From the IMG/VR virus record IMGVR_UViG_3300036766_002181, positions 62,001-126,000 of that record: DNA of 64,000 bases; one strand, written 5' to 3'. The translations under genes were made by a program, and so were the position numbers. Position 1 is the first letter of the stretch, and each line of letters opens with the position of its first letter. Under the pieces are notes generated by a model, which saw only the letters and a program-made list of their open reading frames with translations, ran no database searches and had not been told where the DNA came from. Shown piece after piece: positions 17,519-49,727 of this stretch.

Positions 17519-18700
17519 TCAAAGAATGCGGGCAGCCAGGGCACTTAGCTCGCTTCTCAGACCCTCATGTAGGGAAACGTGACCAAACAGGGCATATCCG
17601 TGGAACTTCTGAATGGCCGTTGTAAGGGCATTAAACTTGATACTAAGATCAAGTCTATCAATCTGTTCTATATCTCCTGTAAAGATAACCTTTGTATTTT
17701 GCCCGGCTCTTGTTAAAACTGCCTTAAGTTCGTGCGCAGAAATATTTTGTGATTCATCAAGCAATATGATTGAATTATTAATTGATCTGCCACGAATATA
17801 GGTCAAAGCCTCTACCTCAATAATTCCCTTATTAAGAAAATAATCAAGAGTGGTTCCCGGCTGGTGGTGTTGGGTGGCGGCACCACTGGCCTGTCGCTTC
17901 TCATCATGATAACGCCTGTTGCCTTTTCGATTTCTTTTTTGGCCGTTGTATCGAGCGGTTTCAAATCCGGGTTTAAGAACTTTGTTGCCTCCAAAGCTAT
18001 CAACCGAGGCTGCCATCTCTTCATTGTCTTCCAAAAGAAATTTTAGATTATCCTTTATTGGGCTCATCCAAACGTCCAATTTTTCTCGCATATCGCCCGG
18101 CAAATAACCGATATCTTTTCCAACCGGATGGATCGGCCTTATAATAACGAGCCTCTTATATTTTTTGTTTGGTCCCATGATCTGTTCTAGGGCAGATTCA
18201 ATTGCAATTATGGTTTTTCCTGTGCCCGAAGAACCAATCAGAGTTACAAAGTGAACAGAAGGATCTGTAAGAAGCTCAAAGGCAACGACCTGCTCTACAT
18301 TAAGGGGTTTTAATTTTTCGAATCTTTGTTCTTTAACAAACCTATATTTTCCTTCGTCGCAATACCTTAAAAGCATATAAGGCTTTATATTCTTGTCATA
18401 ATTGATAATCAAAAAGTCATTTTCTTTTAAGGGACAATTTTTTGGTTTAATTTGATCTCCCATAGAAAAATGTGGGCTTGCACTAAAGTCGCCATGAGCA
18501 AATCCCTGATATTCTTCCCAAAATCTAGAAAGGGTTTCTTCGTTTGAAATCTTAATGAAGTAACAAGATGGCGGAATAAAGGAATTTTTCTTTTTTGTTC
18601 CTTCTTCTAAAGACACAGAAGGAGTAGCCTTTGGAGAACTTACCACTGTGGCCTTTTTTAATCTTGAAGAAGAAGCGATCGGAGCTTTTGGTTTTTTCAC
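17519..18700 (-). CDS. phoH: PhoH-family ATPase
   Basis: PLNVEQ, GSSGTGKT Walker A, IGYLPG..REKL..W, YIRGRS, LDESQN, RAG, GDIEQID, RSELS. Confidence 0.95.
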   Translation of the reverse strand: MKKPKAPIASSSRLKKATVVSSPKATPSVSLEEGTKKKNSFIPPSCYFIKISNEETLSRFWEEYQGFAHGDFSASPHFSMGDQIKPKNCPLKENDFLIINYDKNIKPYMLLRYCDEGKYRFVKEQRFEKLKPLNVEQVVAFELLTDPSVHFVTLIGSSGTGKTIIAIESALEQIMGPNKKYKRLVIIRPIHPVGKDIGYLPGDMREKLDVWMSPIKDNLKFLLEDNEEMAASVDSFGGNKVLKPGFETARYNGQKRNRKGNRRYHDEKRQASGAATQHHQPGTTLDYFLNKGIIEVEALTYIRGRSINNSIILLDESQNISAHELKAVLTRAGQNTKVIFTGDIEQIDRLDLSIKFNALTTAIQKFHGYALFGHVSLHEGLRSELSALAARIL

Positions 18701-18721
18701 TGTTTTTATTATTGCTATTGT

Positions 18722-19234
18722 TTAAAAAATCAACGGCCAAAGCGCCTTAACAATAATTGCTATGGCCGCAAGAAGAAAGGCCCACAAAACCTTGTTTGTA
18801 TTCTTGTTTAGTCTAACTGCTCCATCCAGGTGTTCTAAACCCTGCCCGCCTATTTTTTTTAAACTGTTTTCAAGATTTTCAACCATCATCAATCTGCTGC
18901 TATATGATTTGGTACTTTCAGAAAGTTCTCTTATCTCGTCAACCAGACCGGCACTTATATTTTTTGTATCCTGAATTCTTCGATAGATGCCATCATCAGG
19001 ATTATATAGGGCCTGTCCTATTTCTCCAATCTTCTCCTTTGTTTCATCCTGTTTAATCATAACCGAGTTAAGATCAGAAACAATTTTTCCTTGAATATCC
19101 TTAATTTCATTTACCTTATTAACAAGCTCGTGAAATTCCCCATTCATGGCTGGTGAGTTTTTTATTTCTCTTAATAGGGAAAGGATTTCTTTTTCTTCTT
19201 GTTGTGCCGAGGGCATACTATTCCAATCCAACAA
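18722..19234 (-). CDS. Coiled-coil protein with C-terminal TM anchor (holin/haemolysin-XhlA-like architecture)
   Basis: Heptad-rich body and C-terminal VLWAFLLAAIAIIVKALWPLIF. Confidence 0.55.
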   Translation of the reverse strand: MLDWNSMPSAQQEEKEILSLLREIKNSPAMNGEFHELVNKVNEIKDIQGKIVSDLNSVMIKQDETKEKIGEIGQALYNPDDGIYRRIQDTKNISAGLVDEIRELSESTKSYSSRLMMVENLENSLKKIGGQGLEHLDGAVRLNKNTNKVLWAFLLAAIAIIVKALWPLIF

Positions 19235-19264: not shown

Positions 19265-20794
19265 ATGGAAGAATTTAACAAAATCAATAAATTTACCAAT
19301 TTTAATAATCGACAAGGGTTCTTGGCCGAACTCACAAGAGTCTCTGATAAGTTTGTCAAAAACTATACGAATATAGAGAGCCTAATAACACAAAATTTAA
19401 TTCTTATAGACAAAAATAATTCTTATCATTTTCTTAACGAAATTCTAAAGCCCGACTTAAACAACAAAATAGAAGTTAATATATGTAGGCTTTTAAGCAA
19501 AACAATGCACCAATCAGAATTATTGGCCTGTGATGCTTCTCGCATGGTTTTTGCCGGGGCCTTATTGGCACTTGAAAAAATATTAAGAAATGAAAAGCTG
19601 TTAAATACAATTCTTCATAAAGATGATGATTTTGAGCAGAGCCTAGAACAGGCCATGAGAAAAATCAAGGAAGCAATTCAAAATTGTGCCTCTATACCAA
19701 CAAAAAATACAATAAAAAGCCAATCAGCATTTTTTGCCCAATTCACAACACAAGGTACAGAGCAGTTGCATCGTGTCTGTATTGAAGCAGTTGAATTGGC
19801 CGGCCTAGAAGGCAAGATTTTTATAAAAAATGGAACACAGAATAATCACTACATTCTTGAATTAAAGGATGGCTATACCTTTGACTTGTTAGAATCTTTT
19901 GAAATGTTTTCTCAGCAGCCATCGGGTGGAGTTTGGGAAAAAAGAGAATGCAAGGCCCTTGTTGTTGATGGCTTTGTTGAAAAGGTTTCTGAGATTGATC
20001 AACTTTTGAATGTTGCCTATGAAACAAAACAACCTATGATTATTGTTTCCCAGGGCTTTTCTGAGGAGGTTGTCTCCACTTTATTTACAAATTGGAGACA
20101 AGAAAAACTTCAGGTTTTGCCAATTAAACTAAAACAAGATATAGATAGCCTCAATGTTATTAATGACATTGGTGCGGTTTGCGGTATGGAGCCTATTTCA
20201 TATCTGCGAGGCGAACTATCAAAATATATTAAGTTTGAAAATTTGCCAACAATTGATCGTATTACCGTTGCCTTTAACAAAAAAAGTAGCAAGTCAAAAC
20301 ACCAGGTTTCCTTTGAAAACAATAAAACAAAAAAGGCAGTCTTTGCTCAAATAAAAGCCCTCTCAGAAAAAAGAGAACAAAATAAATTTGTTGAGGACGT
20401 ACAGGGCTTCATGGACAATAGAATTAAAAGCCTATCTCCAAATTCTGTTTATTTTTATTTGCCAAATGAAAGCCCTGCCTCTTTGGATCAAAAAAGAATA
20501 ATAATAGATACCAAGCTAAGACAAATAAAAGGCATGTTTAATTATGGCGTTGTTGACAGCGACGACTGGTGTTATCACCTAACCCGAGATTATTTGCTTC
20601 ATCATAGCGGAATTTATAGCATGGCGGAAAATGAGTTTGAAGAAATTTTTTTCAAGTTTATTACTGAGATTTTTTTCGATATCAGATACGGACACAGCTT
20701 CTCTTCTTTGGCAGTCTACGTAGGACTCCTTTTGGGGATTAAGCTTGGCTTCTCTTTAATTTCTTCGGGTGGAATCATAACAACAGAAAGCTAG
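19265..20794 (+). CDS. Divergent GroEL/chaperonin-like protein lacking the canonical ATP-binding motif
   Basis: Apical-domain-like ALVVDGFVEKVSEIDQLLNVAYETKQPMIIVSQGFSEEVVSTLFTN, DIGAVCG, NYGVV; GDGTT is replaced by CDASR. Confidence 0.8.
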   Translation: MEEFNKINKFTNFNNRQGFLAELTRVSDKFVKNYTNIESLITQNLILIDKNNSYHFLNEILKPDLNNKIEVNICRLLSKTMHQSELLACDASRMVFAGALLALEKILRNEKLLNTILHKDDDFEQSLEQAMRKIKEAIQNCASIPTKNTIKSQSAFFAQFTTQGTEQLHRVCIEAVELAGLEGKIFIKNGTQNNHYILELKDGYTFDLLESFEMFSQQPSGGVWEKRECKALVVDGFVEKVSEIDQLLNVAYETKQPMIIVSQGFSEEVVSTLFTNWRQEKLQVLPIKLKQDIDSLNVINDIGAVCGMEPISYLRGELSKYIKFENLPTIDRITVAFNKKSSKSKHQVSFENNKTKKAVFAQIKALSEKREQNKFVEDVQGFMDNRIKSLSPNSVYFYLPNESPASLDQKRIIIDTKLRQIKGMFNYGVVDSDDWCYHLTRDYLLHHSGIYSMAENEFEEIFFKFITEIFFDIRYGHSFSSLAVYVGLLLGIKLGFSLISSGGIITTES

Positions 20795-30354: not shown

Positions 30355-31044
30355 GTGTCAGGAATTGATAATGATAAGATACAAATTCAACTCGTTGGTC
30401 AACAGAAATCAAAAAAATCATCTACTGTAGTTGAATTGCCTGCCGATGTTTCTTCTTCTTTTAATGTCGAACCTACTGTGACGCCGAAACCCGTCAATAT
30501 ACCGCTCGATAACCAAACTCTCTCTTCCAAGCAAGAGGTTATTCCAAATGTCCCCAAACAACATCAAGCCGATTATATAACGCATCTTATTGAATGCAAC
30601 TGCTTTATTCGTCAATTTAAAAATTCAACAAACCCGCCGAGTCATAAATTTATCGTTTTCAGCGAGCTTGATGAAAGCGCAAATGTTAAGCCAAGTTATG
30701 CCAAGTGTAACAACTGTGGGGCCGTTAGAAGAATAACAGAAATTTGTGTTTCACAGGCAGCACCCTCAATGAACGAAGATTCTAGATCCCTAGAAACAAT
30801 AGATGATATAAGACTAGAACTGCCACAGAATCTTATTAAGATTCTTGAGAAACACGAATGCGAGTTACATACCTGGCAGGAGGCCCGCTTTATTTTAAAG
30901 GCTGGGCTTTTTGGGAGGTTTGTTGTTTTGTCAAAAGAAAGAACAAAAGAGGATCTTGTTATTGGCAAAACATGCCAAATATTGGGAAATGATCTTTATA
31001 AAATTGAAAATTTTGAAAGAGACGAACGTGGGATTTCTTTTTAA
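30355..31044 (+). CDS. Hypothetical Cys-containing protein
   Basis: LIECNC, KCNNCG...EIC suggest zinc binding. Confidence 0.65.
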   Translation: MSGIDNDKIQIQLVGQQKSKKSSTVVELPADVSSSFNVEPTVTPKPVNIPLDNQTLSSKQEVIPNVPKQHQADYITHLIECNCFIRQFKNSTNPPSHKFIVFSELDESANVKPSYAKCNNCGAVRRITEICVSQAAPSMNEDSRSLETIDDIRLELPQNLIKILEKHECELHTWQEARFILKAGLFGRFVVLSKERTKEDLVIGKTCQILGNDLYKIENFERDERGISF

Positions 31045-39749: not shown

Positions 39750-40847
39750 ATGATATTTGTTCAAAAAGAAGCTGCTGGTGACTCTGGCATGATAGAAAAA
39801 TCTGGAATTTATCAAATTAAAAATATCATAAACAATAAGTTATATATCGGTTCTGCTAGAAACTTCAGAATAAGATTTAATGACCATATTCATAAACTTA
39901 AAAGGAATAGGCATCCAAATAAATATCTTCAAAACGTTTATAATCAAAACCCAAAAAGCTTGGCTTTTACCATAATAGAAATTGTTGAAAACTGGCAACT
40001 TAATCTTCTTATAAAGGAACAAGAATATTTGAATGTCTTCCACGACAAACAGCAGACCTGTTATAACATGTGTCCTACGGCTGGCTCGGCTTTTGGAAGA
40101 AGACACTCAGAAGAAACCAAGAAAAAGATGTCACGATCTGCTATTGGACAACCGTGTTCTATAGAAACCAGGGCCAAAATGTCTGAGATAAGCAAAAAAA
40201 GAATTAAAGATCACTTTAAATCTGGCAAAGAAAATCCAATGTTTGGAAAAACCGGGAGCAAACACCATTTTTATGGAAAGCACCAAAGCTCAGAATCAAT
40301 TCTTAAAAGAAAAGAAACCATAGCAAAAAGAGACAAACCAATTGCCTATCATGCCAGACAAATTGCCCAATATGATATGGAGGGAAATTTAATTCAGATT
40401 TTTAAATCCGTATCAGAAGCAGAAAGACAATTGAAAAACAAAGGCATCAGTAGTTGCATGTATAGAAAAGCACAAACTTCTGCTGGTTTTGTCTGGAGAG
40501 ATCCGCTAGAGGATGGTTCTTTTCCGTCAAAAATTGATGCAATTACAAAAAAGCCCACTGGCTTTTTTGGCAGACATTCACAAGAGACAATAGAGAAAAT
40601 AAGAAAAAATCATCCAAGCAAAAGATCAGTACAACAATTTGACAAACTCAATCAAGCCATATCTCTTGAAACATATTCCAGTCTAAAGGAAGCCAGCAGA
40701 AAAACTGGAATAGTCTATTCTACAATTTGTGCCTGCTGTAAAGGCAAAAGACCATCTGCCGGCGGATTCATATGGAAATATCTTTTAGAAAAAGAACCGC
40801 CAGCAGATAATCAATATCCACCATCATCATCTTCTGGCTTGTTATAA
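39750..40847 (+). mobile_element. Free-standing GIY-YIG homing endonuclease with NUMOD3/NUMOD1 repeats, opposite to the structural operon
   Basis: SGIYQIKNIINNKLYIGSA, HSEETKKKMS, GKENPMFGK, IAQYDMEGNLI..F.S..EA; likely start at 39789. Confidence 0.9.
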
Positions 40848-43645: not shown

Positions 43646-46624
43646 TTACACTTGGTTTGTAACCACAAAGTCAATGCTCACCGTTTCAAGCGTCTTGCTA
43701 GGCGTAATAAATATGGATCCTCTTATAATCCTGTTTTCTAAGTCTGCCTGAGTGGTCGTTGTTGTATCGATCTTAACCAAGAATCTTTCAACTCCCTTTT
43801 GATCCTGTATGGCCTTTAAAATTGGGGTTGTAAGCTGGGCAAATCTTGCAAGGGTTTCTTCACGACCCTGCTCAAAGAGCATTCTATAACCAACGGCCTT
43901 AACCTTGCGTCTAATGTCAATTAGAAGCCTTCGAACGTTAACTCTATCAAGAGAGCTTTCAGTTTGAAGAAGTGTCTTTTGTCCCCAAACCACAACTCCT
44001 TCTGAACCTGCAAAAGAAACAAGTGGATTAATGTTTGCATCCTGAAGAGTGTCCATGTTTTCTTTAGACAGTCTAACGGCTGCCGATTCTACTGTGTCTA
44101 GAGAGCCTCTGGTAAATCCAGCAGGAGCAAACCATGGATGGGCTACTGCATCATTCTTTGCAAAGGCACCAAGAACGGCGACTGAGGGTGGCACCACTCT
44201 GGTTCTTCCTGTAAAACTATCTCTAAGAACAACATCTGGGAAATAGGCAGCACCAAAAGAGCTGTTAATTCCACGGGCTGTATGTTGGTTGGAGGTGTTC
44301 TTAACGCTCAAAATCTGATTACTTGAAGAAATTGGCAAATTCTGAATATCATACTGTGGAACATCCATAATAAAGACAGAATCAAATCTGTTTTCATTAA
44401 CAAGAAGCGCCCTATCAGTGATTACTGTATGGCGAATTCCTGGAACTGCCATCATTTGAATGTCAATTTCTGTAACATCCTCAAAGATATCCAATGCCTT
44501 ATTAAAAGCAGCAACCGTTGGTCCGTCAGTAAGGCCACGATCTGCATAGGTCATTTCTTCTGTCACGGCCAAGTCTGTCATGTTGACGGCATCTCTGTCG
44601 AAAACATTTGTTCCATCAAATCCGCCATGCAAGAAGAAGGAGAACTTGGCAACATTGCGTGTTGCGGCATCAGTCAAATCATTTACAGAAAGGGCTCTAG
44701 TGTCGCTGTCCACTGTAACATTACCATCTCTTACATAAATCCACTCATCCATTTTTTGTGTATTTGGTTTATCAAAGGCATTAATTGCAATTTGTATATT
44801 TCCCAGGGAGAACTTATTATGATTAAATCTATCAGCATCAAGAATGCCATTCTCGGCAGAATCGGCAACTCCCTGGTTATTGCTTAAGACCATATTCATA
44901 AAGTCTGTATGGAAATTTGGATAATACTTGTTAAACGACAGGATGTTGGTATCCTGGGCCGTGCTTAGGTTTGGCTCTGCAACGCTGGTCTTTTCTTCAA
45001 ATTGAATGCCCCAATAAAGAGCCTTATCAACAACTCTATTTGGCGTTGAGCCTCTGGTAATTCTTTCTCTAAGAGGAACAGGCAATTGAACAATATTAAA
45101 GAAGGGATCAGAAACAGAAAGATAATCACCATCATCAAAACTGTTAAATGGAGCCGACCCAGAAGTTACAAGGTGTGGAACCCCACGGAAACCAAATGGA
45201 ACTGCGGCAGGAGAAAGTTCGCCATCAGAAACCTTGTTGGCCATTTCAACTCTCATATATCTTGAATTGTTTTCAAAATTGCCTTCGGTAATAAGCTTTT
45301 GTGAGCCAATTGCTGCATCAAAATTAAAGAAGGTTTTTGTATCTCCAACAATTCGAGCAACATATTGCGGAGAATCAGGATTTAGACTTAATCCTCTCCA
45401 TGCCTCAACTGCAACAGGAGCCTTGTCATTGTCGTTAAAATCTCTTACAAGGAGATCAAACTTGCCATAAGGCTCTGCATCTGTGCCTGGGATAATATTC
45501 TCAATTGAGAACTTAAGTCTAGAGTTTGGTTCCTTGCCATCTGAAAGGGCAGAAATCTTAAACAGATTTTCTTCCTGGCCACCAAATTTCTGTGAAACCA
45601 CATAAACAGATTCGGCAGTACGATATCTGTCTTCAAAATTTTCAAAACTTGGGATCGTGGTTGAGCCCGAGTTTCTAGTTGGCGAAGCTGACGTTAATAG
45701 GAAAACAACGTCTTCAGTTTCGAGTGCTCCCGAGACTGCGCCTACACCAAAATCCTCTAAAACAACACCTGAGCCTGTTGGCGTGGCTAGGGCTGGGTGA
45801 ATTTTATAATCAGCATATAGGAGGTGGCCTGCCTGCTCGACCTTATAAGGATCTGTATTAAGCACCTTGGTAAGATAGTTTGGTGCCGTTGGGTCAAAGG
45901 AGGCTGTAATAACATTTGGAAAGGCTGGATCAGGATTGCTGTGTCCATTTAGAAGCACAACAAATTCTTGACGCCCGTTGGCTATGTTTAGAGAGCCTGT
46001 AAGGCTCCCTGAAGCCGTTGAAGAAGTGCCTGTGGCATCTGGTGCATTGTCTGCCACTCTGCTGCTAGAGAGGGTTGCATACACTCCTGAAGCTGCAAAA
46101 ACAATACCACGAACAACCGGAACTCCTTCTATTGGTAGGCCAGCATCGGAAAAAATTGTTGAGGAACCTGTTTGCTTCATATAGCAACCAAGGACAAAGG
46201 TTCTGCCTTCATCTCCTTCGCCAGGAACGGTTACATATTGATTATCATCAAGACCACCACCAGGAGCCTGTGGAAGAACCGCACCGACAACAAAGCCGCC
46301 AAAAACAACACGGCCAGAGTTGTCACCAGCATCTTCTCTTGCCTTGCCTGAACCGGCACCAAGAACCCTAAGAAAGGTTAATGCCTGTGAATTTCTTAGC
46401 CATTCGATGGCTGCCATGGGAGCAGCAGCCTGATCATCTGTCGATGTACCAAAATCTACCACGAAGTCTGAATCCGTTGGAAGGGTTACAGGAACGAAGG
46501 CTGGTCCCTTTTGAGAAGTGCCTATAACTCCAGCCGGAATACCGGCAGGACGAATTGAAGTTGGACCAGTTCTATTGATTACCCTTGTCGTAACTCCTGC
46601 GCTCTTGTATGTTATTTGTGACAT
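43646..46624 (-). CDS. Tail sheath protein (copy 1)
   Basis: GVIGTSQKGPAFVP, LRVLG, GGFDG, AVPGI, YFPDV, PPSVA, PWFAPAG..RG, INP, WGQKTL, RVNVRRL. Confidence 0.95.
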   Translation of the reverse strand: MSQITYKSAGVTTRVINRTGPTSIRPAGIPAGVIGTSQKGPAFVPVTLPTDSDFVVDFGTSTDDQAAAPMAAIEWLRNSQALTFLRVLGAGSGKAREDAGDNSGRVVFGGFVVGAVLPQAPGGGLDDNQYVTVPGEGDEGRTFVLGCYMKQTGSSTIFSDAGLPIEGVPVVRGIVFAASGVYATLSSSRVADNAPDATGTSSTASGSLTGSLNIANGRQEFVVLLNGHSNPDPAFPNVITASFDPTAPNYLTKVLNTDPYKVEQAGHLLYADYKIHPALATPTGSGVVLEDFGVGAVSGALETEDVVFLLTSASPTRNSGSTTIPSFENFEDRYRTAESVYVVSQKFGGQEENLFKISALSDGKEPNSRLKFSIENIIPGTDAEPYGKFDLLVRDFNDNDKAPVAVEAWRGLSLNPDSPQYVARIVGDTKTFFNFDAAIGSQKLITEGNFENNSRYMRVEMANKVSDGELSPAAVPFGFRGVPHLVTSGSAPFNSFDDGDYLSVSDPFFNIVQLPVPLRERITRGSTPNRVVDKALYWGIQFEEKTSVAEPNLSTAQDTNILSFNKYYPNFHTDFMNMVLSNNQGVADSAENGILDADRFNHNKFSLGNIQIAINAFDKPNTQKMDEWIYVRDGNVTVDSDTRALSVNDLTDAATRNVAKFSFFLHGGFDGTNVFDRDAVNMTDLAVTEEMTYADRGLTDGPTVAAFNKALDIFEDVTEIDIQMMAVPGIRHTVITDRALLVNENRFDSVFIMDVPQYDIQNLPISSSNQILSVKNTSNQHTARGINSSFGAAYFPDVVLRDSFTGRTRVVPPSVAVLGAFAKNDAVAHPWFAPAGFTRGSLDTVESAAVRLSKENMDTLQDANINPLVSFAGSEGVVVWGQKTLLQTESSLDRVNVRRLLIDIRRKVKAVGYRMLFEQGREETLARFAQLTTPILKAIQDQKGVERFLVKIDTTTTTQADLENRIIRGSIFITPSKTLETVSIDFVVTNQV

Positions 46625-46676: not shown

Positions 46677-49600
46677 TTATACGAAACTGGTCCCGGACCT
46701 AGTTATGACAAAATTCATATCAATAAATTCTACTGATCTAACCGGCTTTAAAACAATTCGACAATTGATTTTATGAGCATTGATATCTGCATCAGAATTG
46801 TTCGAACTATCGCAGATAATCTTAAAAGTCTGGATTCCTTGTCTAATTTGAACGCTTGTCATTACTGAATTAATTTGATTTTTTAATTGATCCCTCAAGT
46901 CAGGAGTAATGTTTTCCCAAATTAGGCGATTTCCAATATCGATAACCTGGCGCTTAAGATCATTAAGCATTCTTACAACGTTTACGCTACCAAGAGCAGA
47001 CTCTTGCTGCTCTAAAGTATTTTGTGAAAATATGACATAACCTTCTCTTGGGAATTTAACAATTGGGTTGATATGAGCCGAGAAAAGTCTATTTCTTTCT
47101 GGCTGGGTGATTCTCGTGGTTGTTCTTTTAACAAAATCAAGAGCAGCTCTGTTAAACCCTGCGGGTGCAAACCAGGGATAGGCAACCCTATCGTTGAAGG
47201 CAAGAGCAGATACGGCTGCCACAGAAGCAGGAGCGGTTACTCTTCTTCCATTTGCCTCGTCGTCCATAACAATTTCTGGGAAATAAGAAGCCACGAATTC
47301 ATTATCAATTGCCCTGCCTTCAAGGGCATTTGCAGTTTTCTGTGGATCTGGAAAAATTCCAGTTTCTCCATCAAAAACTCTTTCGCCTGCGGCGTTATAG
47401 TTTGGAACATCCATTACATATAATGCCAGACCATAATCTCTAACCTTGTCGGCATAAAAATCGGTTACAAGTGGATCTCTCTGTCCCGGCACAGCAACCA
47501 CATTAACATTAGATGCCATTGCATCTGTAATAATCTTGGCCGATTCTCTATATGAGGCAACCGTATTATTGGCTATTCCTACTCCGTTTTGATTAAAATC
47601 AAATCCGGGAGAAATAAATGAGCCGTTAACATTTCCTAGAGTACCATCTGTTCTGTCTTCTGTTGAAGAGGCTCTATCGTCATAGGTGGCAGCATGCTTG
47701 TCAAGAATGTTTGCCCCATCAAACCCGCCTTGAAGAACCAGAGTAAATTTAGCAAATTGTGAAAATGCATTAAAGGTAGCAGCAGTTGCTCCCTTGTTAA
47801 CAAGAGTGGCAAAGGTAATCCTGTTGGTTGCATCGTCTGCATCTGTAATCATATAGTTTGTTACGTCAGGAATACCGTTTCTTATATAGGCAGCTTCCTT
47901 AATGTGCGCTTCAGCAGAAGAGGTTAAATCATTTAAACTGGTATTACCAAATGCAACCTTGGCCAGGGTAAACTTGTGATTGTGGAATCTATCCTGATTC
48001 ATAGAACTCGTTACGACAGCATCAAGCTCAGAAATTCCATTAAATTGAGTGTAGGCTGCAATAAGAGCATTTGGCTCTGTTACAGGATTTGGGTTTAGAA
48101 CATCCTTAATTCTTTCTAGTTTAACGCCCCAGAAGAATCTTCCGTCAACAATTTCAAAGTTGCCAGGAGCACCTTCTAGCTTACCAGCCTCTGTGGATAC
48201 TGCTCCACGGGTAATCTTAAATCTAAATGGAATTGGTGGTACAACGGCGGCCAACAACTCTGCATCTGCACCCGAAGTGCCAAGATTTGCATGCAATCTT
48301 TTGATATCTGCGAAATCAGCAAGAGAGCCAGATCGATCAAGCAATCTAGAGTTTGTGCTTAAAACTTCATAGCCTCTAAAGCCAAATGGAAGCGATTCGG
48401 CTGGAATCAATTTGCGCTCGACTTCATCTGAGGCAACAACCCGAACAACCTTTGATATGTTTGCATATCGGCCAGAAACGATAAGTCTACGGTCCTGCTC
48501 GTCTTCTGCATCAAAGTTATAAAAGGCTTTTCTGTCGCCAATCTTATGACAAATATAGTTTTCTGATTCAGGATCAAGATTCACATTATTAAATTGTTCA
48601 AGTATACTAATGTTCGTATCTGTATCCTCAAAGTCTCTTACAAGAACCGTAAATGTGCCAAACTTATATCTTGGATTTGAGGACTTCTTAATATCAGAGA
48701 TAGAAATCTTAAATTTCTTATTTGGAAAAGCCCCATCATCACGGGCTTCGAAATGGAAAAGATTGTGCTCGGTAATGCCAAAGGGCTGAGAAATAATTGA
48801 AGGAGTCTTTGCCTGTTTATATCTTGTATCAAATCTTCCAAAGGCATTTAAGAAAGGAAGACCCGTATCTCCTGAAAGATCGCTGGTCTGTGCAGAGCCA
48901 GAAGCAATAACAACATCTCCGCTGCTTGTTCCTACGCTTGCAACGGCGTCATCTACGGCGAAGTTTGCATAAACAACGTGCTTATATGTGCTAAATTGTT
49001 CTGGATCGGTGTTAAGTACCTTGGCAAAATAATCATCATTTGAAGGATCAAGAGAGGCGGTTACAATTCTAATTCCAGGATTTCCTTCATCGGCGGCAAA
49101 GCTTGCACCCAAGGAACAAGAAATAACAATCTTAAACTTTTTGGTTGTACTGTTTGCGGTCGCAGCATCATCTGCACCAATGGCCCAGGATTCATCATGA
49201 TCAAGAACCTGAATTCTTGTATCATTGGCCGTAAAGATAACGCCTCTTACAAGACGAGCATCTGAGCCAGAAAGACTGGTATTATGTGAAAATCCTGCCT
49301 GTCCAAAAGATTCACTCACTGAAATCTCGTGTCTTGCCACAAGAAACTGAACGGCACCATGAATTGGCTCTGAAGCCAAGGAGGCACTAACCTTAAAGCC
49401 GGCATTTACAACCGTTCCCTGTGTTCTTGTTGTTTCTATATCATCGGCGGTTGTGTTGCCACCAGCCCCCAAAACACGCACGAAAGTAAGGGCAGACCTA
49501 CTGTTGAGATGTTCGATTACAGCATAGGGAGCAGCAAATCTTGGGTTTAAATTGCCAAATCTTGTTTTAAAATCAGGAAAGGAACCAACCGTAACCGGAA

Positions 49601-49727
49601 CGAAGGCAGGGCCTCTTTCTGAGGCCCCTATGATACCCGCAGGAATACCAACTGGCTCTTGAACTTCGGCACTTAAGTCAACTTCTGTAGAAAAAAAGCC
49701 TGGAAATTTAAACACTTGACTCGTCAT
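46677..49727 (-). CDS. Tail sheath protein (copy 2)
   Basis: FPGFFSTEVD, GASERGPAFVP, VRVLG, GGFDG, AVPG, PWFAPAGFNRA, INP, VNVVRML. Confidence 0.95.
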   Translation of the reverse strand: MTSQVFKFPGFFSTEVDLSAEVQEPVGIPAGIIGASERGPAFVPVTVGSFPDFKTRFGNLNPRFAAPYAVIEHLNSRSALTFVRVLGAGGNTTADDIETTRTQGTVVNAGFKVSASLASEPIHGAVQFLVARHEISVSESFGQAGFSHNTSLSGSDARLVRGVIFTANDTRIQVLDHDESWAIGADDAATANSTTKKFKIVISCSLGASFAADEGNPGIRIVTASLDPSNDDYFAKVLNTDPEQFSTYKHVVYANFAVDDAVASVGTSSGDVVIASGSAQTSDLSGDTGLPFLNAFGRFDTRYKQAKTPSIISQPFGITEHNLFHFEARDDGAFPNKKFKISISDIKKSSNPRYKFGTFTVLVRDFEDTDTNISILEQFNNVNLDPESENYICHKIGDRKAFYNFDAEDEQDRRLIVSGRYANISKVVRVVASDEVERKLIPAESLPFGFRGYEVLSTNSRLLDRSGSLADFADIKRLHANLGTSGADAELLAAVVPPIPFRFKITRGAVSTEAGKLEGAPGNFEIVDGRFFWGVKLERIKDVLNPNPVTEPNALIAAYTQFNGISELDAVVTSSMNQDRFHNHKFTLAKVAFGNTSLNDLTSSAEAHIKEAAYIRNGIPDVTNYMITDADDATNRITFATLVNKGATAATFNAFSQFAKFTLVLQGGFDGANILDKHAATYDDRASSTEDRTDGTLGNVNGSFISPGFDFNQNGVGIANNTVASYRESAKIITDAMASNVNVVAVPGQRDPLVTDFYADKVRDYGLALYVMDVPNYNAAGERVFDGETGIFPDPQKTANALEGRAIDNEFVASYFPEIVMDDEANGRRVTAPASVAAVSALAFNDRVAYPWFAPAGFNRAALDFVKRTTTRITQPERNRLFSAHINPIVKFPREGYVIFSQNTLEQQESALGSVNVVRMLNDLKRQVIDIGNRLIWENITPDLRDQLKNQINSVMTSVQIRQGIQTFKIICDSSNNSDADINAHKINCRIVLKPVRSVEFIDMNFVITRSGTSFV

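What the first reader, a model, noticed from the sequence alone, without database searches (positions are those of the whole stretch)
19265..20794. Chaperonin with an eroded ATP-binding site
Apical and intermediate GroEL features are recognisable, but the equatorial GDGTT is replaced by CDASR. The N-terminal TLGP motif and the GGG after EEGVV are missing; only an Asp in the D398-like position (RIIIDTK) seems to remain. Established: phage chaperonins (EL gp146, OBP gp246) retain ATPase motifs. Inference: this is an ATP-independent holdase, a subunit that poisons or redirects host GroEL, or a partner of a second active phage chaperonin. It is one of the few plus-strand genes, and TAAGAT lies 6 nt before its ATG (possibly leaderless).
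Basis: partly seen in the sequence, partly recalled or inferred. Interest (0 to 1): 0.6.

Follow-up and report, generated by a model that had tools for sequence, protein, structure and literature searches.

The report
Nucleotide-site-less GroEL paralogue of huge phages
This huge phage carries a second, highly diverged copy of the GroEL protein-folding machine that has lost its whole ATP site yet is strongly conserved and always found alongside a normal phage GroEL, so it probably works as an ATP-independent binding partner rather than as a folding motor.

Summary
The ORF at 19265-20794 (+) is real (509 aa) and has a full GroEL fold (AF2 pLDDT 89.7; VIA-align Z 25.8 over 465 residues). It fails every sequence model cut-off (no Pfam hit; NCBIfam 46 bits against 352).

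About 70 word-search relatives, 121 viral loci and several unannotated ESM Atlas clusters lack the TLGP loop, D52, GDGTT, D398, GGG414-416 and D495.

The key new fact is that the same 244.7-kb phage record encodes a canonical, motif-intact Cpn60 (631 aa) about 70 kb downstream, outside the window. In relatives, 12 of 12 contigs of 157 kb or more (4 of 4 near-complete) carry both genes. The two gene trees are congruent. The divergent family is one clade, absent from cellular genomes and from cultured phages.

Selection is purifying (dN/dS 0.11) but inverted. The apical domain is kept; the equatorial domain is decayed and variable in length.

The model adopts the GroES-bound-like open state, while the canonical partner modelled the same way is closed.

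Best reading: an ATP-independent apical-groove binding module, functionally tied to the phage's own chaperonin. The physical partnership is untested. The TAAGAT/leaderless idea has no support.

The parts
19265..20794 (+). Gene for the divergent GroEL-fold protein (P0001, 509 aa, stop included)
   Evidence: ORF and translation. Full-length GroEL fold: Foldseek E 8e-25; VIA-align Z 25.8, 465 aligned, model 9-509 = GroEL 2-525. hhalign 99.5 % to canonical Cpn60.
19265..19684 (+). N-terminal equatorial segment (res 1-140), degenerate. It keeps the N-terminal strand (10-15) and the stem-loop hairpin (39-41 / 47-49) in the model. The TLGP loop is replaced and D52 is deleted.
   Evidence: Secondary structure of the model; site mapping. 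Mean pairwise identity among 12 family members is 20.5 % against 52.8 % in their canonical partners. A 388-aa Atlas cluster aligns only to residues 91-506.
19526..19546 (+). Former phosphate-binding loop (res 88-94, ACDASRM in place of AGDGTTT)
   Evidence: Profile-profile mapping. The family has S/A-A/G/S-G/K-S/A-G/A/S at these columns, with D at the D87 column in 2 of 62. The canonical copies are invariant, 14 of 14.
19685..19867 (+). Intermediate-domain segment 1 (res 141-201), with the conserved AGLEGKI motif (res 178-185)
19868..20446 (+). Apical domain (res 202-394), the best-conserved part of the family
   Evidence: Fits solved apical domains at Z 24.3, rmsd 1.9 A over 180 residues (5cdj_B). 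Pairwise identity is 39.7 % against 47.6 % in canonical partners, ratio 0.83. 44 of the 66 strongly conserved positions lie here.
19979..20092 (+). Equivalents of GroEL helices H and I (res 239-276). This is the substrate/GroES groove, remodelled into family-specific acidic motifs (ExVSEID..L and GFSEEVV..T...N).
   Evidence: Family-specific conserved residues: E239, V241, S242, E243, D245 (= GroEL L234), G264, F265, S266, E267, V269. Framework residues L248, E268, T272 and N276 are shared with GroEL.
20447..20542 (+). Intermediate-domain segment 2 (res 395-426, helix M equivalent), with invariant D415 and R419 and near-invariant K422
   Evidence: D415 62/62, R419 62/62, K422 61/62. The D398 column itself is variable.
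20543..20791 (+). C-terminal equatorial segment (res 427-509), shortened. GGG414-416 is replaced by SDD. About 30 residues are missing relative to GroEL 417-496. The last helix and the C-terminal strand are kept.
   Evidence: The length of this segment varies from 34 to 83 aa among family members and is bounded by stop codons.
18722..19234 (-). Divergently transcribed 170-aa gene of unknown function, conserved next to the gene in relatives (context, function not linked)
   Evidence: tblastn hit in the same relative position in 47 of 80 related loci; no family above cut-off.
17519..18700 (-). PhoH-like ATPase gene, syntenic with the divergent chaperonin gene in relatives (context)
   Evidence: PF02562 E 8.4e-45, phrog_2765 E 1.7e-67; present in 47 of 80 related loci.

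Best explanation
P0001 belongs to a phage-restricted, so far unannotated family of GroEL-fold 'pseudo-chaperonins'. It is an old paralogue of the group I chaperonin.

Shown: it keeps the three-domain fold but has lost every element of the nucleotide site. It is under purifying selection. It is inherited together with a canonical, motif-intact phage Cpn60 in one lineage of huge contractile-tailed phages.

Inferred: it neither binds nor hydrolyses ATP. Its selected surface is the apical domain, above all the helix H/I groove that in GroEL binds substrates and the GroES loop. That groove is remodelled here into a conserved, partly acidic site, which suggests a specific conserved ligand rather than promiscuous hydrophobic binding.

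Further inference: the protein sits permanently in an 'open', GroES-bound-like conformation. The invariant helix-M residues (D415, R419, K422) and the invariant equatorial E85 may hold the intermediate domain down where nucleotide would normally do so.

Most likely role: an ATP-independent holdase or adaptor that captures particular phage proteins and acts in the same pathway as the phage's own ATP-driven chaperonin. Whether the two proteins touch is not shown.
For: Fold: AF2 pLDDT 89.7, pTM 0.79. Foldseek E about 1e-24 to GroEL/Hsp60. VIA-align Z 25.8, 465 residues, model 9-509 = GroEL 2-525.

Site loss across the family: the T30-G35, D52, G86-T91, D398, G414-G416 and D495 equivalents are all replaced or deleted in 62 sequences, while 14 canonical copies are invariant at these positions.

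Family and selection: 70 relatives at 30-41 % identity. 19 invariant columns. 121 viral loci. dN/dS 0.111 against 0.091 for the canonical partner. Atlas clusters of 283, 125, 71 and 73 members, 95-100 % viral, unannotated.

Second chaperonin: G000:C1:152538-154433, 631 aa, PF00118 185 bits, with TIGPGG, GDGTST, VGGSTEVE, IVPGGG and IIDP.

Co-inheritance: canonical Cpn60 is present in 14 of 24 relatives' contigs, in all 12 contigs of 157 kb or more, and in 4 of 4 at least 90 % complete. The divergent family is monophyletic (support 100) and its topology is congruent with the partners' clade. Chaperonin-bearing phages outside that clade lack it, e.g. G031, 100 % complete. It is absent from 185,579 prokaryote species genomes and from GenBank phages.

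Inverted constraint: the ratio of divergent to canonical pairwise identity is 0.83 for the apical domain but 0.38-0.48 for the equatorial and intermediate domains. 44 of 66 conserved positions are apical and 5 are equatorial; the family-specific ones lie on helices H and I.

Conformation: P0001's model is 4.2-4.7 A from GroES-bound subunits and about 16 A from apo GroEL. P0002, modelled the same way, is 3.4-3.9 A from apo and 11-14 A from GroES-bound subunits.
Against: No biochemical or expression data exist; the only runs that hold the sequence are sediment DNA. Co-inheritance may reflect only shared vertical descent of two useful genes. Gene neighbours (PhoH-like ATPase, unknowns) give no functional hint, and the two chaperonin genes lie about 70 kb apart. 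The open conformation is a prediction from a 62-sequence alignment, not a measurement. No ligand for the apical groove has been identified. An unconventional nucleotide site cannot be excluded by sequence alone.
Confidence: 0.5

Rival explanations
1. Catalytically dead subunit of a hetero-oligomeric ring. P0001 would co-assemble with the canonical phage Cpn60, as chloroplast Cpn60 alpha/beta or the low-activity CCT subunits do, and tune its cycle or client range.
For: Strict co-occurrence and co-divergence with a canonical Cpn60. P0001's model keeps the N-terminal strand, the stem-loop hairpin and the C-terminal strand, which build the intra-ring sheet in GroEL. Most relatives have no Cpn10.
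Against: The equatorial domain, which makes the ring contacts, is the least conserved part (20-21 % against 45-53 % in partners). It also varies in size: the C-terminal segment is 34-83 aa, and an Atlas cluster of 73 members lacks roughly the first 90 residues. A subunit that must fit a conserved partner interface should show the opposite pattern.
Confidence: 0.15
2. Self-standing homo-oligomeric ring that acts as an ATP-independent holdase or cage for large phage structural proteins.
For: The full three-domain fold is retained, including the ring-sheet elements, in P0001 and its closest relatives. Isolated GroEL apical domains are solved as 'mini-chaperonins' and match the model. That they have ATP-independent chaperone activity is established knowledge, not tested here.
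Against: The ring-forming parts are variable and partly lost in short family members. No evidence for self-association was obtained.
Confidence: 0.15
3. Exapted GroEL scaffold with a non-chaperone role, for example an assembly factor, a structural or injected virion protein, or a regulator that uses the apical groove to bind one partner.
For: Family-specific charged residues replace the hydrophobic groove residues (L234 to D, V263 to K, Y199 to K), and they are highly conserved, as expected for a specific partner. The window is rich in structural genes such as tail sheath.
Against: Nothing links it to the virion. Conserved neighbours are a PhoH-like ATPase and unknowns. This rival overlaps with the main explanation and differs only in the nature of the ligand.
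Confidence: 0.1
4. Dominant-negative poison or redirector of the host's GroEL, acting by co-assembly or capping.
For: GroEL fold. Phages are known to manipulate host GroEL through gp31/GroES-like proteins (established knowledge; PMC5649160, PMC7824862 for the distribution of phage Hsp10).
Against: The equatorial interface is fast-evolving and shrinking, while bacterial GroEL is highly conserved. The phage brings its own canonical chaperonin, which makes dependence on host GroEL less likely. The host is unknown.
Confidence: 0.05
5. Still a nucleotide-dependent chaperonin that uses a non-canonical site.
For: D415 on helix M is invariant and lies next to the D398 column; a one-residue register error is possible. 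Invariant E85 lies at the end of the helix that precedes the former P-loop.
Against: All five motif groups that contact phosphate, Mg and the base are lost, and most of their columns are variable within the family. The corresponding equatorial segment is shortened.
Confidence: 0.05

Closest known systems
Group I chaperonin GroEL/Cpn60 (PF00118, TIGR02348)
   Same: Three-domain fold from end to end (Z 25.8; apical domain at rmsd 1.9 A). Shared framework residues: G170, G173, G192, F195, L237, P246, E257, T261, N265, D291, R368, G410.
   Different: About 14 % identity. Below all curated cut-offs. Every nucleotide-site motif is lost. The equatorial domain is shortened and poorly conserved. Groove residues are partly charged. 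The predicted conformation is open rather than closed.
Phage-encoded chaperonins (EL gp146, OBP gp246, AR9; PMC7185714, PMC9598537)
   Same: GroEL-like proteins of large phages. Like them, this phage lineage mostly lacks its own Cpn10.
   Different: Those are ATP-dependent, motif-bearing chaperonins. Their counterpart in this genome is the other gene, P0002. P0001 has no tblastn match in 50,697 GenBank phage records, whereas P0002 matches 243 of them.
Chlamydial GroEL2/GroEL3 (NCBIfam NF038369 'variant chaperonin GroEL3'; PMC1892554)
   Same: Extra group I paralogues kept beside a canonical GroEL1, with divergence at ATP-binding/hydrolysis and GroES-binding positions. NF038369 gives a weak hit (29.9 bits).
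   Different: The chlamydial paralogues are full-length, far less diverged and cellular. P0001 scores 29.9 against a cut-off of 600, and its site loss is complete. No specific relationship is shown.
BBS6/MKKS, BBS10, BBS12 chaperonin-like proteins (group II; PMC2846930)
   Same: Chaperonin-fold paralogues with degraded ATP-hydrolysis motifs (unrecognisable in BBS12) that exist alongside an active chaperonin.
   Different: Those are eukaryotic group II relatives and still keep the Gly-Pro ATP-binding dipeptide (PMC2846930). P0001 is group I-like (best matches GroEL/Hsp60; CCT ranks lower) and has lost that dipeptide too.
GroEL apical-domain 'mini-chaperonins' (e.g. PDB 1kid, 3vz6)
   Same: The part of P0001 under strongest constraint is exactly this domain, and it superposes at rmsd 2.2-2.4 A. 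This is the functional analogy for nucleotide-independent binding.
   Different: Mini-chaperonins are engineered fragments with a hydrophobic groove. P0001 is a natural full-length protein with a partly acidic groove.

Membership tests
Group I chaperonin Cpn60/GroEL | Scores above the curated cut-off of the family's sequence models (Pfam PF00118 34.3 bits; NCBIfam GroEL models 352-1041 bits) | tested here: not met
   No PF00118 hit at E up to 10. The best NCBIfam GroEL model gives 46.5 bits against 352. Homology is nevertheless significant: E 1.6e-12, and hhalign 99.5 %.
Group I chaperonin Cpn60/GroEL | Equatorial-intermediate-apical three-domain fold | tested here: met
   AF2 pLDDT 89.7. Foldseek E 8e-25. 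VIA-align Z 25.8, 465 residues, model 9-509 to GroEL 2-525.
Group I chaperonin Cpn60/GroEL | Nucleotide-site motifs: TLGP loop, D52, GDGTT, D398, GGG414-416, N479-A481/D495 | tested here: not met
   All are replaced or deleted in P0001 and in the 62-member family, but invariant in 14 canonical copies.
Group I chaperonin Cpn60/GroEL | ATP binding and hydrolysis | not testable with these tools
   Needs purified protein. The sequence predicts loss.
Group I chaperonin Cpn60/GroEL | Assembly into heptameric rings through the equatorial domain | tested here: inconclusive
   P0001's model keeps the strands and hairpin that build the intra-ring sheet. But this domain is the least conserved, and it is truncated in short family members. 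The oligomeric state itself is unknown.
Group I chaperonin Cpn60/GroEL | Hydrophobic helix H/I groove for substrate and GroES (Y199, Y203, F204, L234, L237, L259, V263, V264) | tested here: inconclusive
   L237, L259, Y203 and F204 equivalents stay hydrophobic (L248, V270, F/Y, F/M). But L234 becomes D (59/62), Y199 becomes K (43/62) and V263 becomes K/Y/F.
Phage-encoded ATP-dependent chaperonins (EL gp146 type) | Retained ATPase motifs and recognisable similarity to other phage Cpn60s | tested here: not met
   Motifs are lost. No tblastn match in GenBank phages. The tree places all divergent copies apart from all canonical viral copies on a branch of about 6 substitutions per site.
Chlamydial variant chaperonin GroEL3 (NF038369) | Score above the model's cut-off (600 bits) | tested here: not met
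   29.9 bits, residues 33-309.
New family: phage nucleotide-site-less GroEL paralogues (proposed here) | Monophyly; the shared signature AGLEGKI / DG..E.VSEID / GFSEEVVATL..N / D415-R419-K422; absence of ATP motifs; co-residence with a canonical Cpn60 | tested here: met
   Alignment A2. Clade support 100. Motif table. Co-residence in 12 of 12 large contigs plus the window's own genome.

The most novel reading that the evidence does not exclude
The family is a chaperonin-derived cofactor. It would be a GroEL-fold protein frozen, without nucleotide, in the GroES-bound-like open state. It would use its remodelled apical groove to dock onto, cap or feed clients to the phage's own GroES-less chaperonin. 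That would make it a new kind of co-chaperonin or adaptor that evolved from the chaperonin itself, and a natural example of a nucleotide switch replaced by fixed intramolecular contacts.
Probability: 0.12. Interest if true: 0.85.

Novelty: new variant of a known kind. Interest (0 to 1): 0.62.

Why it matters
Chaperonins are defined by their ATP-driven cycle. Natural group I relatives that have dropped the nucleotide site entirely yet stay under strong selection are rare, and I found none described for viruses in the searchable literature. Here such a protein forms a large viral family, with several hundred members in Atlas clusters. It always rides with a normal phage chaperonin.

If the family proves to be an ATP-independent client adaptor or a locked-open conformer, two things follow. 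It would show how a folding machine can be reduced to its binding module. It would also give structural biologists a nucleotide-free mimic of the GroES-bound state, and it would identify a dedicated folding or assembly pathway in huge phages.

In practical terms, these genes are currently annotated as hypothetical or mislabelled as GroEL, and could now be named correctly.

Tried and rejected
(1) Complex prediction on two copies of P0001 residues 11-509 gave 'no answer', score 0.00.

(2) The hetero-complex P0001 + P0002 was not run. Pairs from relatives (e.g. G012, 424 + 549 aa) would fit.

(3) megablast and tblastn of the locus and of P0001 against 50,697 GenBank phage records found no match.

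(4) The pattern-seeded scan of 185,579 prokaryote species genomes found no relative. Because it is pattern-based, very distant members could be missed.

(5) The look-up of sequencing runs found only two sediment DNA runs, one of them the probable source, and no RNA. Read laying was therefore not used, and transcription, the 5' end and the leaderless idea remain untested.

(6) TAAGAT-N6-ATG as a signal was rejected (2 against 0.92 expected). The sigma-70-like scan was at chance. Absence of SD is common in this genome.

(7) The forced global hhalign mapping of the C-terminus (G503 to G492) was rejected in favour of the structural alignment (model 509 = GroEL about 525). The D495 equivalent was re-read accordingly.

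(8) The N-terminal lengths of three short relatives (G001, G002, G005) are uncertain, because alternative GTG/TTG starts could add 21-55 codons. I rely instead on the stop-defined C-terminal lengths and on the independent 388-aa Atlas cluster.

(9) Pseudogene was rejected: intact frames in more than 60 relatives, and dN/dS 0.11.

(10) Gene neighbourhood gave no functional lead.

(12) The proposed E85/D415/R419/K422 clamp could not be checked, because model coordinates are not exposed.
Full report
1. What is at the coordinates.

The window holds an ATG-initiated ORF at 19265-20794 on the + strand, encoding 509 aa. The start is supported by relatives, whose alignment begins at the same Met. The window is bases 62001-126000 of a 244,715-bp linear IMG/VR virus record that CheckV rates 57 % complete. 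Its only DNA holders are sediment metagenomes. The window also encodes two tail-sheath paralogues, so this is a huge contractile-tailed phage. Most ORFs run on the minus strand.

2. Is it GroEL-like?

By sequence, only marginally. There is no Pfam Cpn60_TCP1 hit at any threshold. NCBIfam GroEL models give at most 46.5 bits against cut-offs of 352 or more, covering residues 122-430. PHROG 5725 'chaperonin groEL' gives E 3.4e-15. PDB chains of GroEL/Hsp60 match at about 1e-6, over the intermediate and apical part only.

By profile and structure, the answer is clearly yes. hhalign of the family against 14 canonical Cpn60s gives 99.5 % probability over the full length. An AlphaFold2 model built on the family alignment is confident (pLDDT 89.7, pTM 0.79). 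Foldseek finds GroEL/Hsp60 at E about 1e-24. VIA-align gives Z 25.8 with 465 aligned residues, model 9-509 spanning GroEL 2-525, and the apical domain alone fits solved apical domains at rmsd 1.9 A.

3. The nucleotide site.

The mapping onto E. coli numbering gives the following.

- T30-L31-G32-P33-K34-G35 aligns to L40-I41-T42-Q43-N44-L45.
- D52 falls in a deletion.
- G86-D87-G88-T89-T90-T91 aligns to C89-D90-A91-S92-R93-M94.
- D398 aligns to T416.
- G414-G415-G416 aligns to S432-D433-D434.
- In the structural register, the D495-P496 pair corresponds to F479-S480.

Two refinements apply. The Asp of 'RIIID' (D415) aligns to E397, not D398, though a one-residue slip cannot be excluded. The apparent survival of D87 as D90 is peculiar to this sequence.

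4. It is a family, and the loss is ancient.

The word-based search returned 70 proteins of about 460-505 aa at 30-41 % identity. None has a Pfam domain, and they sit on contigs of up to 365 kb. A 62-sequence alignment has 19 invariant columns. IMG/VR holds at least 121 loci, on contigs of up to 461 kb. The ESM Atlas holds several unannotated clusters (283, 125, 71 and 73 members), 95-100 % viral.

Across the family, the ATP-site columns are either consistently non-canonical or variable. For example, the D87 column reads G41 K12 N4 D2, and the D398 column I18 N17 T8 L7. The canonical copies from the same phages are invariant at every one of these positions.

The gene is not decaying. dN/dS between the two closest genomes is 0.111, against 0.091 for their canonical chaperonin.

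5. The second chaperonin.

A Pfam search of the whole record found one canonical Cpn60 at G000:C1:152538-154433. This lies outside the window, about 70 kb downstream of P0001. It scores 185 bits and encodes 631 aa, with TIGPGG, AGDGTSTATVLA, VGGSTEVE, QEGIVPGGG and IIDPCKVT. It is only 36-38 % identical to any GenBank phage or bacterial GroEL. P0001 and P0002 share 23 % identity over 184 apical residues. No Cpn10 is present in the record. Four of four near-complete relatives also lack one, and one 81 %-complete relative has one.

6. Co-inheritance.

Among 24 related contigs that carry the divergent gene, 14 also carry exactly one canonical Cpn60. These include all 12 contigs of 157 kb or more and all 4 that are at least 90 % complete. 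The 10 without it are fragments estimated at 27-40 % complete.

The reverse does not hold. Of 18 other large chaperonin-bearing viral contigs, only one clearly (G029) and one possibly (G032) carry the divergent gene. Well-sampled records such as G031 (100 %), G030 (87 %) and G027 (83 %) have only the canonical one. None of the 243 GenBank phage records with a Cpn60 matches P0001.

A maximum-likelihood tree (LG+C20, 42 rows) shows four things.

- The divergent family is one clade (support 100), separated from all canonical sequences by about 6 substitutions per site.
- All partner canonical copies fall in one clade (support 97).
- The branching order within the two clades is the same: (G003), (G002, G001, G005), (G012, (G000, G008, G010), (G020, (G009, (G007, G019)))).
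- Terminal branches of the divergent copies are roughly three times longer.

The pair therefore dates to the ancestor of this phage lineage and has been kept since. Whether the divergent copy arose by duplication of that lineage's canonical gene cannot be decided on so long a branch. A pattern-seeded scan found no member in 185,579 prokaryote species genomes.

7. Where selection acts.

I compared the same 12 genomes for both genes. Mean pairwise identity, divergent against canonical, is as follows.

- Equatorial, N-terminal part: 20.5 against 52.8 % (ratio 0.39).
- Intermediate 1: 29.1 against 60.0 % (0.48).
- Apical: 39.7 against 47.6 % (0.83).
- Intermediate 2: 28.9 against 75.6 % (0.38).
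- Equatorial, C-terminal part: 21.2 against 44.6 % (0.47).

The C-terminal equatorial segment ranges from 34 to 83 aa and is bounded by stop codons; GroEL has about 115. N-terminal lengths also vary, although three short starts are uncertain. Independently, a 73-member Atlas cluster of 388 aa aligns only to P0001 residues 91-506.

Of 66 positions conserved in at least 85 % of members, 5 are equatorial, 17 intermediate and 44 apical. Twenty are GroEL framework residues. The 46 family-specific ones concentrate on the equivalents of helices H and I: E239, V241, S242, E243, D245 and G264, F265, S266, E267, V269. GroEL's L234, Y199 and V263 are replaced by D, K and K/Y/F.

This is the opposite of a canonical chaperonin, where the equatorial ATP domain is the conserved core. 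I take it as the main argument that the selected function is binding through the apical domain. It is also the main argument against obligate insertion into a conserved ring, whether the phage's or the host's.

8. Conformation.

The monomer model of P0001 superposes on GroES-bound (cis / 'football') subunits at rmsd 4.2-5.7 A (TM 0.63-0.70). It superposes on apo or T-state GroEL only at about 16 A.

As a control, I modelled the canonical partner by the same procedure (45-sequence alignment, pLDDT 86.2). It gives the reverse result: 3.4-3.9 A to apo GroEL and 11-14 A to GroES-bound subunits. The contrast is specific to the divergent copy, but it is a prediction.

My inference is as follows. The invariant helix-M residues D415, R419 and K422, together with invariant E85 at the end of the helix preceding the former P-loop, may hold the intermediate domain down on the equatorial domain in place of nucleotide. 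I could not verify this, because coordinates are not exposed.

9. Mechanism proposed, and its status.

Shown:
- GroEL fold.
- Complete, family-wide loss of nucleotide-site residues.
- Purifying selection centred on the apical domain.
- Restriction to phages.
- Long-term co-inheritance with a canonical Cpn60.

Inferred:
- No ATP binding or hydrolysis.
- A specific ligand for the remodelled H/I groove.
- A constitutively open conformation.
- Action in the same pathway as the canonical phage chaperonin, as a holdase or adaptor for particular phage proteins.

Not shown:
- Any physical contact.
- The oligomeric state.
- Any client.
- Expression timing.

Rivals and their weights are given in the structured fields.

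10. Comparison with known systems.

It works most like an apical-domain 'mini-chaperonin' embedded in a vestigial GroEL body. Its evolutionary situation resembles chlamydial GroEL2/3, which are extra paralogues diverged at ATP and GroES sites (PMC1892554). It also resembles the eukaryotic BBS12/MKKS chaperonin-like proteins, whose hydrolysis motifs are degraded (PMC2846930).

It is not a member of Cpn60 by the curated models, and it fails the defining nucleotide-motif test. It is not related to the characterised phage chaperonins EL gp146, OBP gp246 or AR9, which are ATP-dependent (PMC7185714, PMC9598537). Their counterpart here is P0002. Surveys of viral chaperonins (PMC5649160, PMC7824862) do not mention such paralogues, as far as the searchable library shows.

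11. Expression signals.

The intergenic gap to the divergently transcribed upstream gene is 30 nt. TAAGAT-N6-ATG is not enriched. Promoter-like matches are at chance. 18 of 31 ORFs in the window lack an SD-like element. No RNA data exist. The leaderless suggestion is therefore neither supported nor testable here.

12. Verdict.

The finding is a new, phage-specific variant of the chaperonin fold, with a clear and testable hypothesis. Interest 0.62.

Noticed in passing
L177:516-3299 (+) = G011:C1:18515-21298, a 189-kb related phage contig: The canonical Cpn60 of this relative is a single 928-aa open frame. An in-frame insert of roughly 336 aa sits between Cpn60 profile positions 62 and 63. The insert carries a LAGLIDADG homing-endonuclease domain (PF05204 32.8 bits against cut-off 21.1; PF14528). 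This is a probable intein in a phage chaperonin.
   Followed up: partly
window 43646-46624 (-) and 46677-49727 (-): Two tandem tail-sheath paralogues of about 1000 aa each (phrog_23, E 4.6e-51 and 3.2e-44). The sheath domain lies in the C-terminal third and the large N-terminal parts are unexplained.
   Followed up: no
window 39750-40847 (+): A homing endonuclease (phrog_314 E 1.2e-33, with HNH and GIY-YIG-like matches). It is one of the few + strand genes and sits between minus-strand genes just upstream of the sheath region.
   Followed up: no
G000:C1:152538-154433 (outside the window; L003:1303-3198): The canonical partner chaperonin is unusually long (631 aa). It has three low-confidence insertions relative to GroEL (about res 45-65, 465-490, 530-570). 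It is only 36-38 % identical to any GenBank GroEL.
   Followed up: partly
G034:C1:113483-114547 (-) and G034:C1:59155-59964 (-): An unrelated 132-kb viral contig holds two Cpn60-like frames of normal length (534 and 548 aa). This is a different kind of chaperonin duplication in phages.
   Followed up: no
G004:C1:143360-143599 (-): One relative (320 kb, 81 % complete) has a Cpn10 gene (45.3 bits) about 8 kb from its canonical Cpn60. Four near-complete relatives have none.
   Followed up: no
window 17519-19234 (-): A PhoH-like ATPase (PF02562 E 8e-45) and a 170-aa unknown protein are conserved immediately upstream of the divergent chaperonin gene, in divergent orientation, in 47 of 80 related loci. 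A 229-aa unknown gene (window 30355-31044, +) recurs downstream in 75 of 80.
   Followed up: partly
P0027 (family member, 464 aa, 319-kb contig): NCBI files this family member as a hypothetical protein of a 'Candidatus Paceibacterota' MAG. It is either a huge-phage contig binned into a bacterial MAG or a hint at the host group.
   Followed up: no
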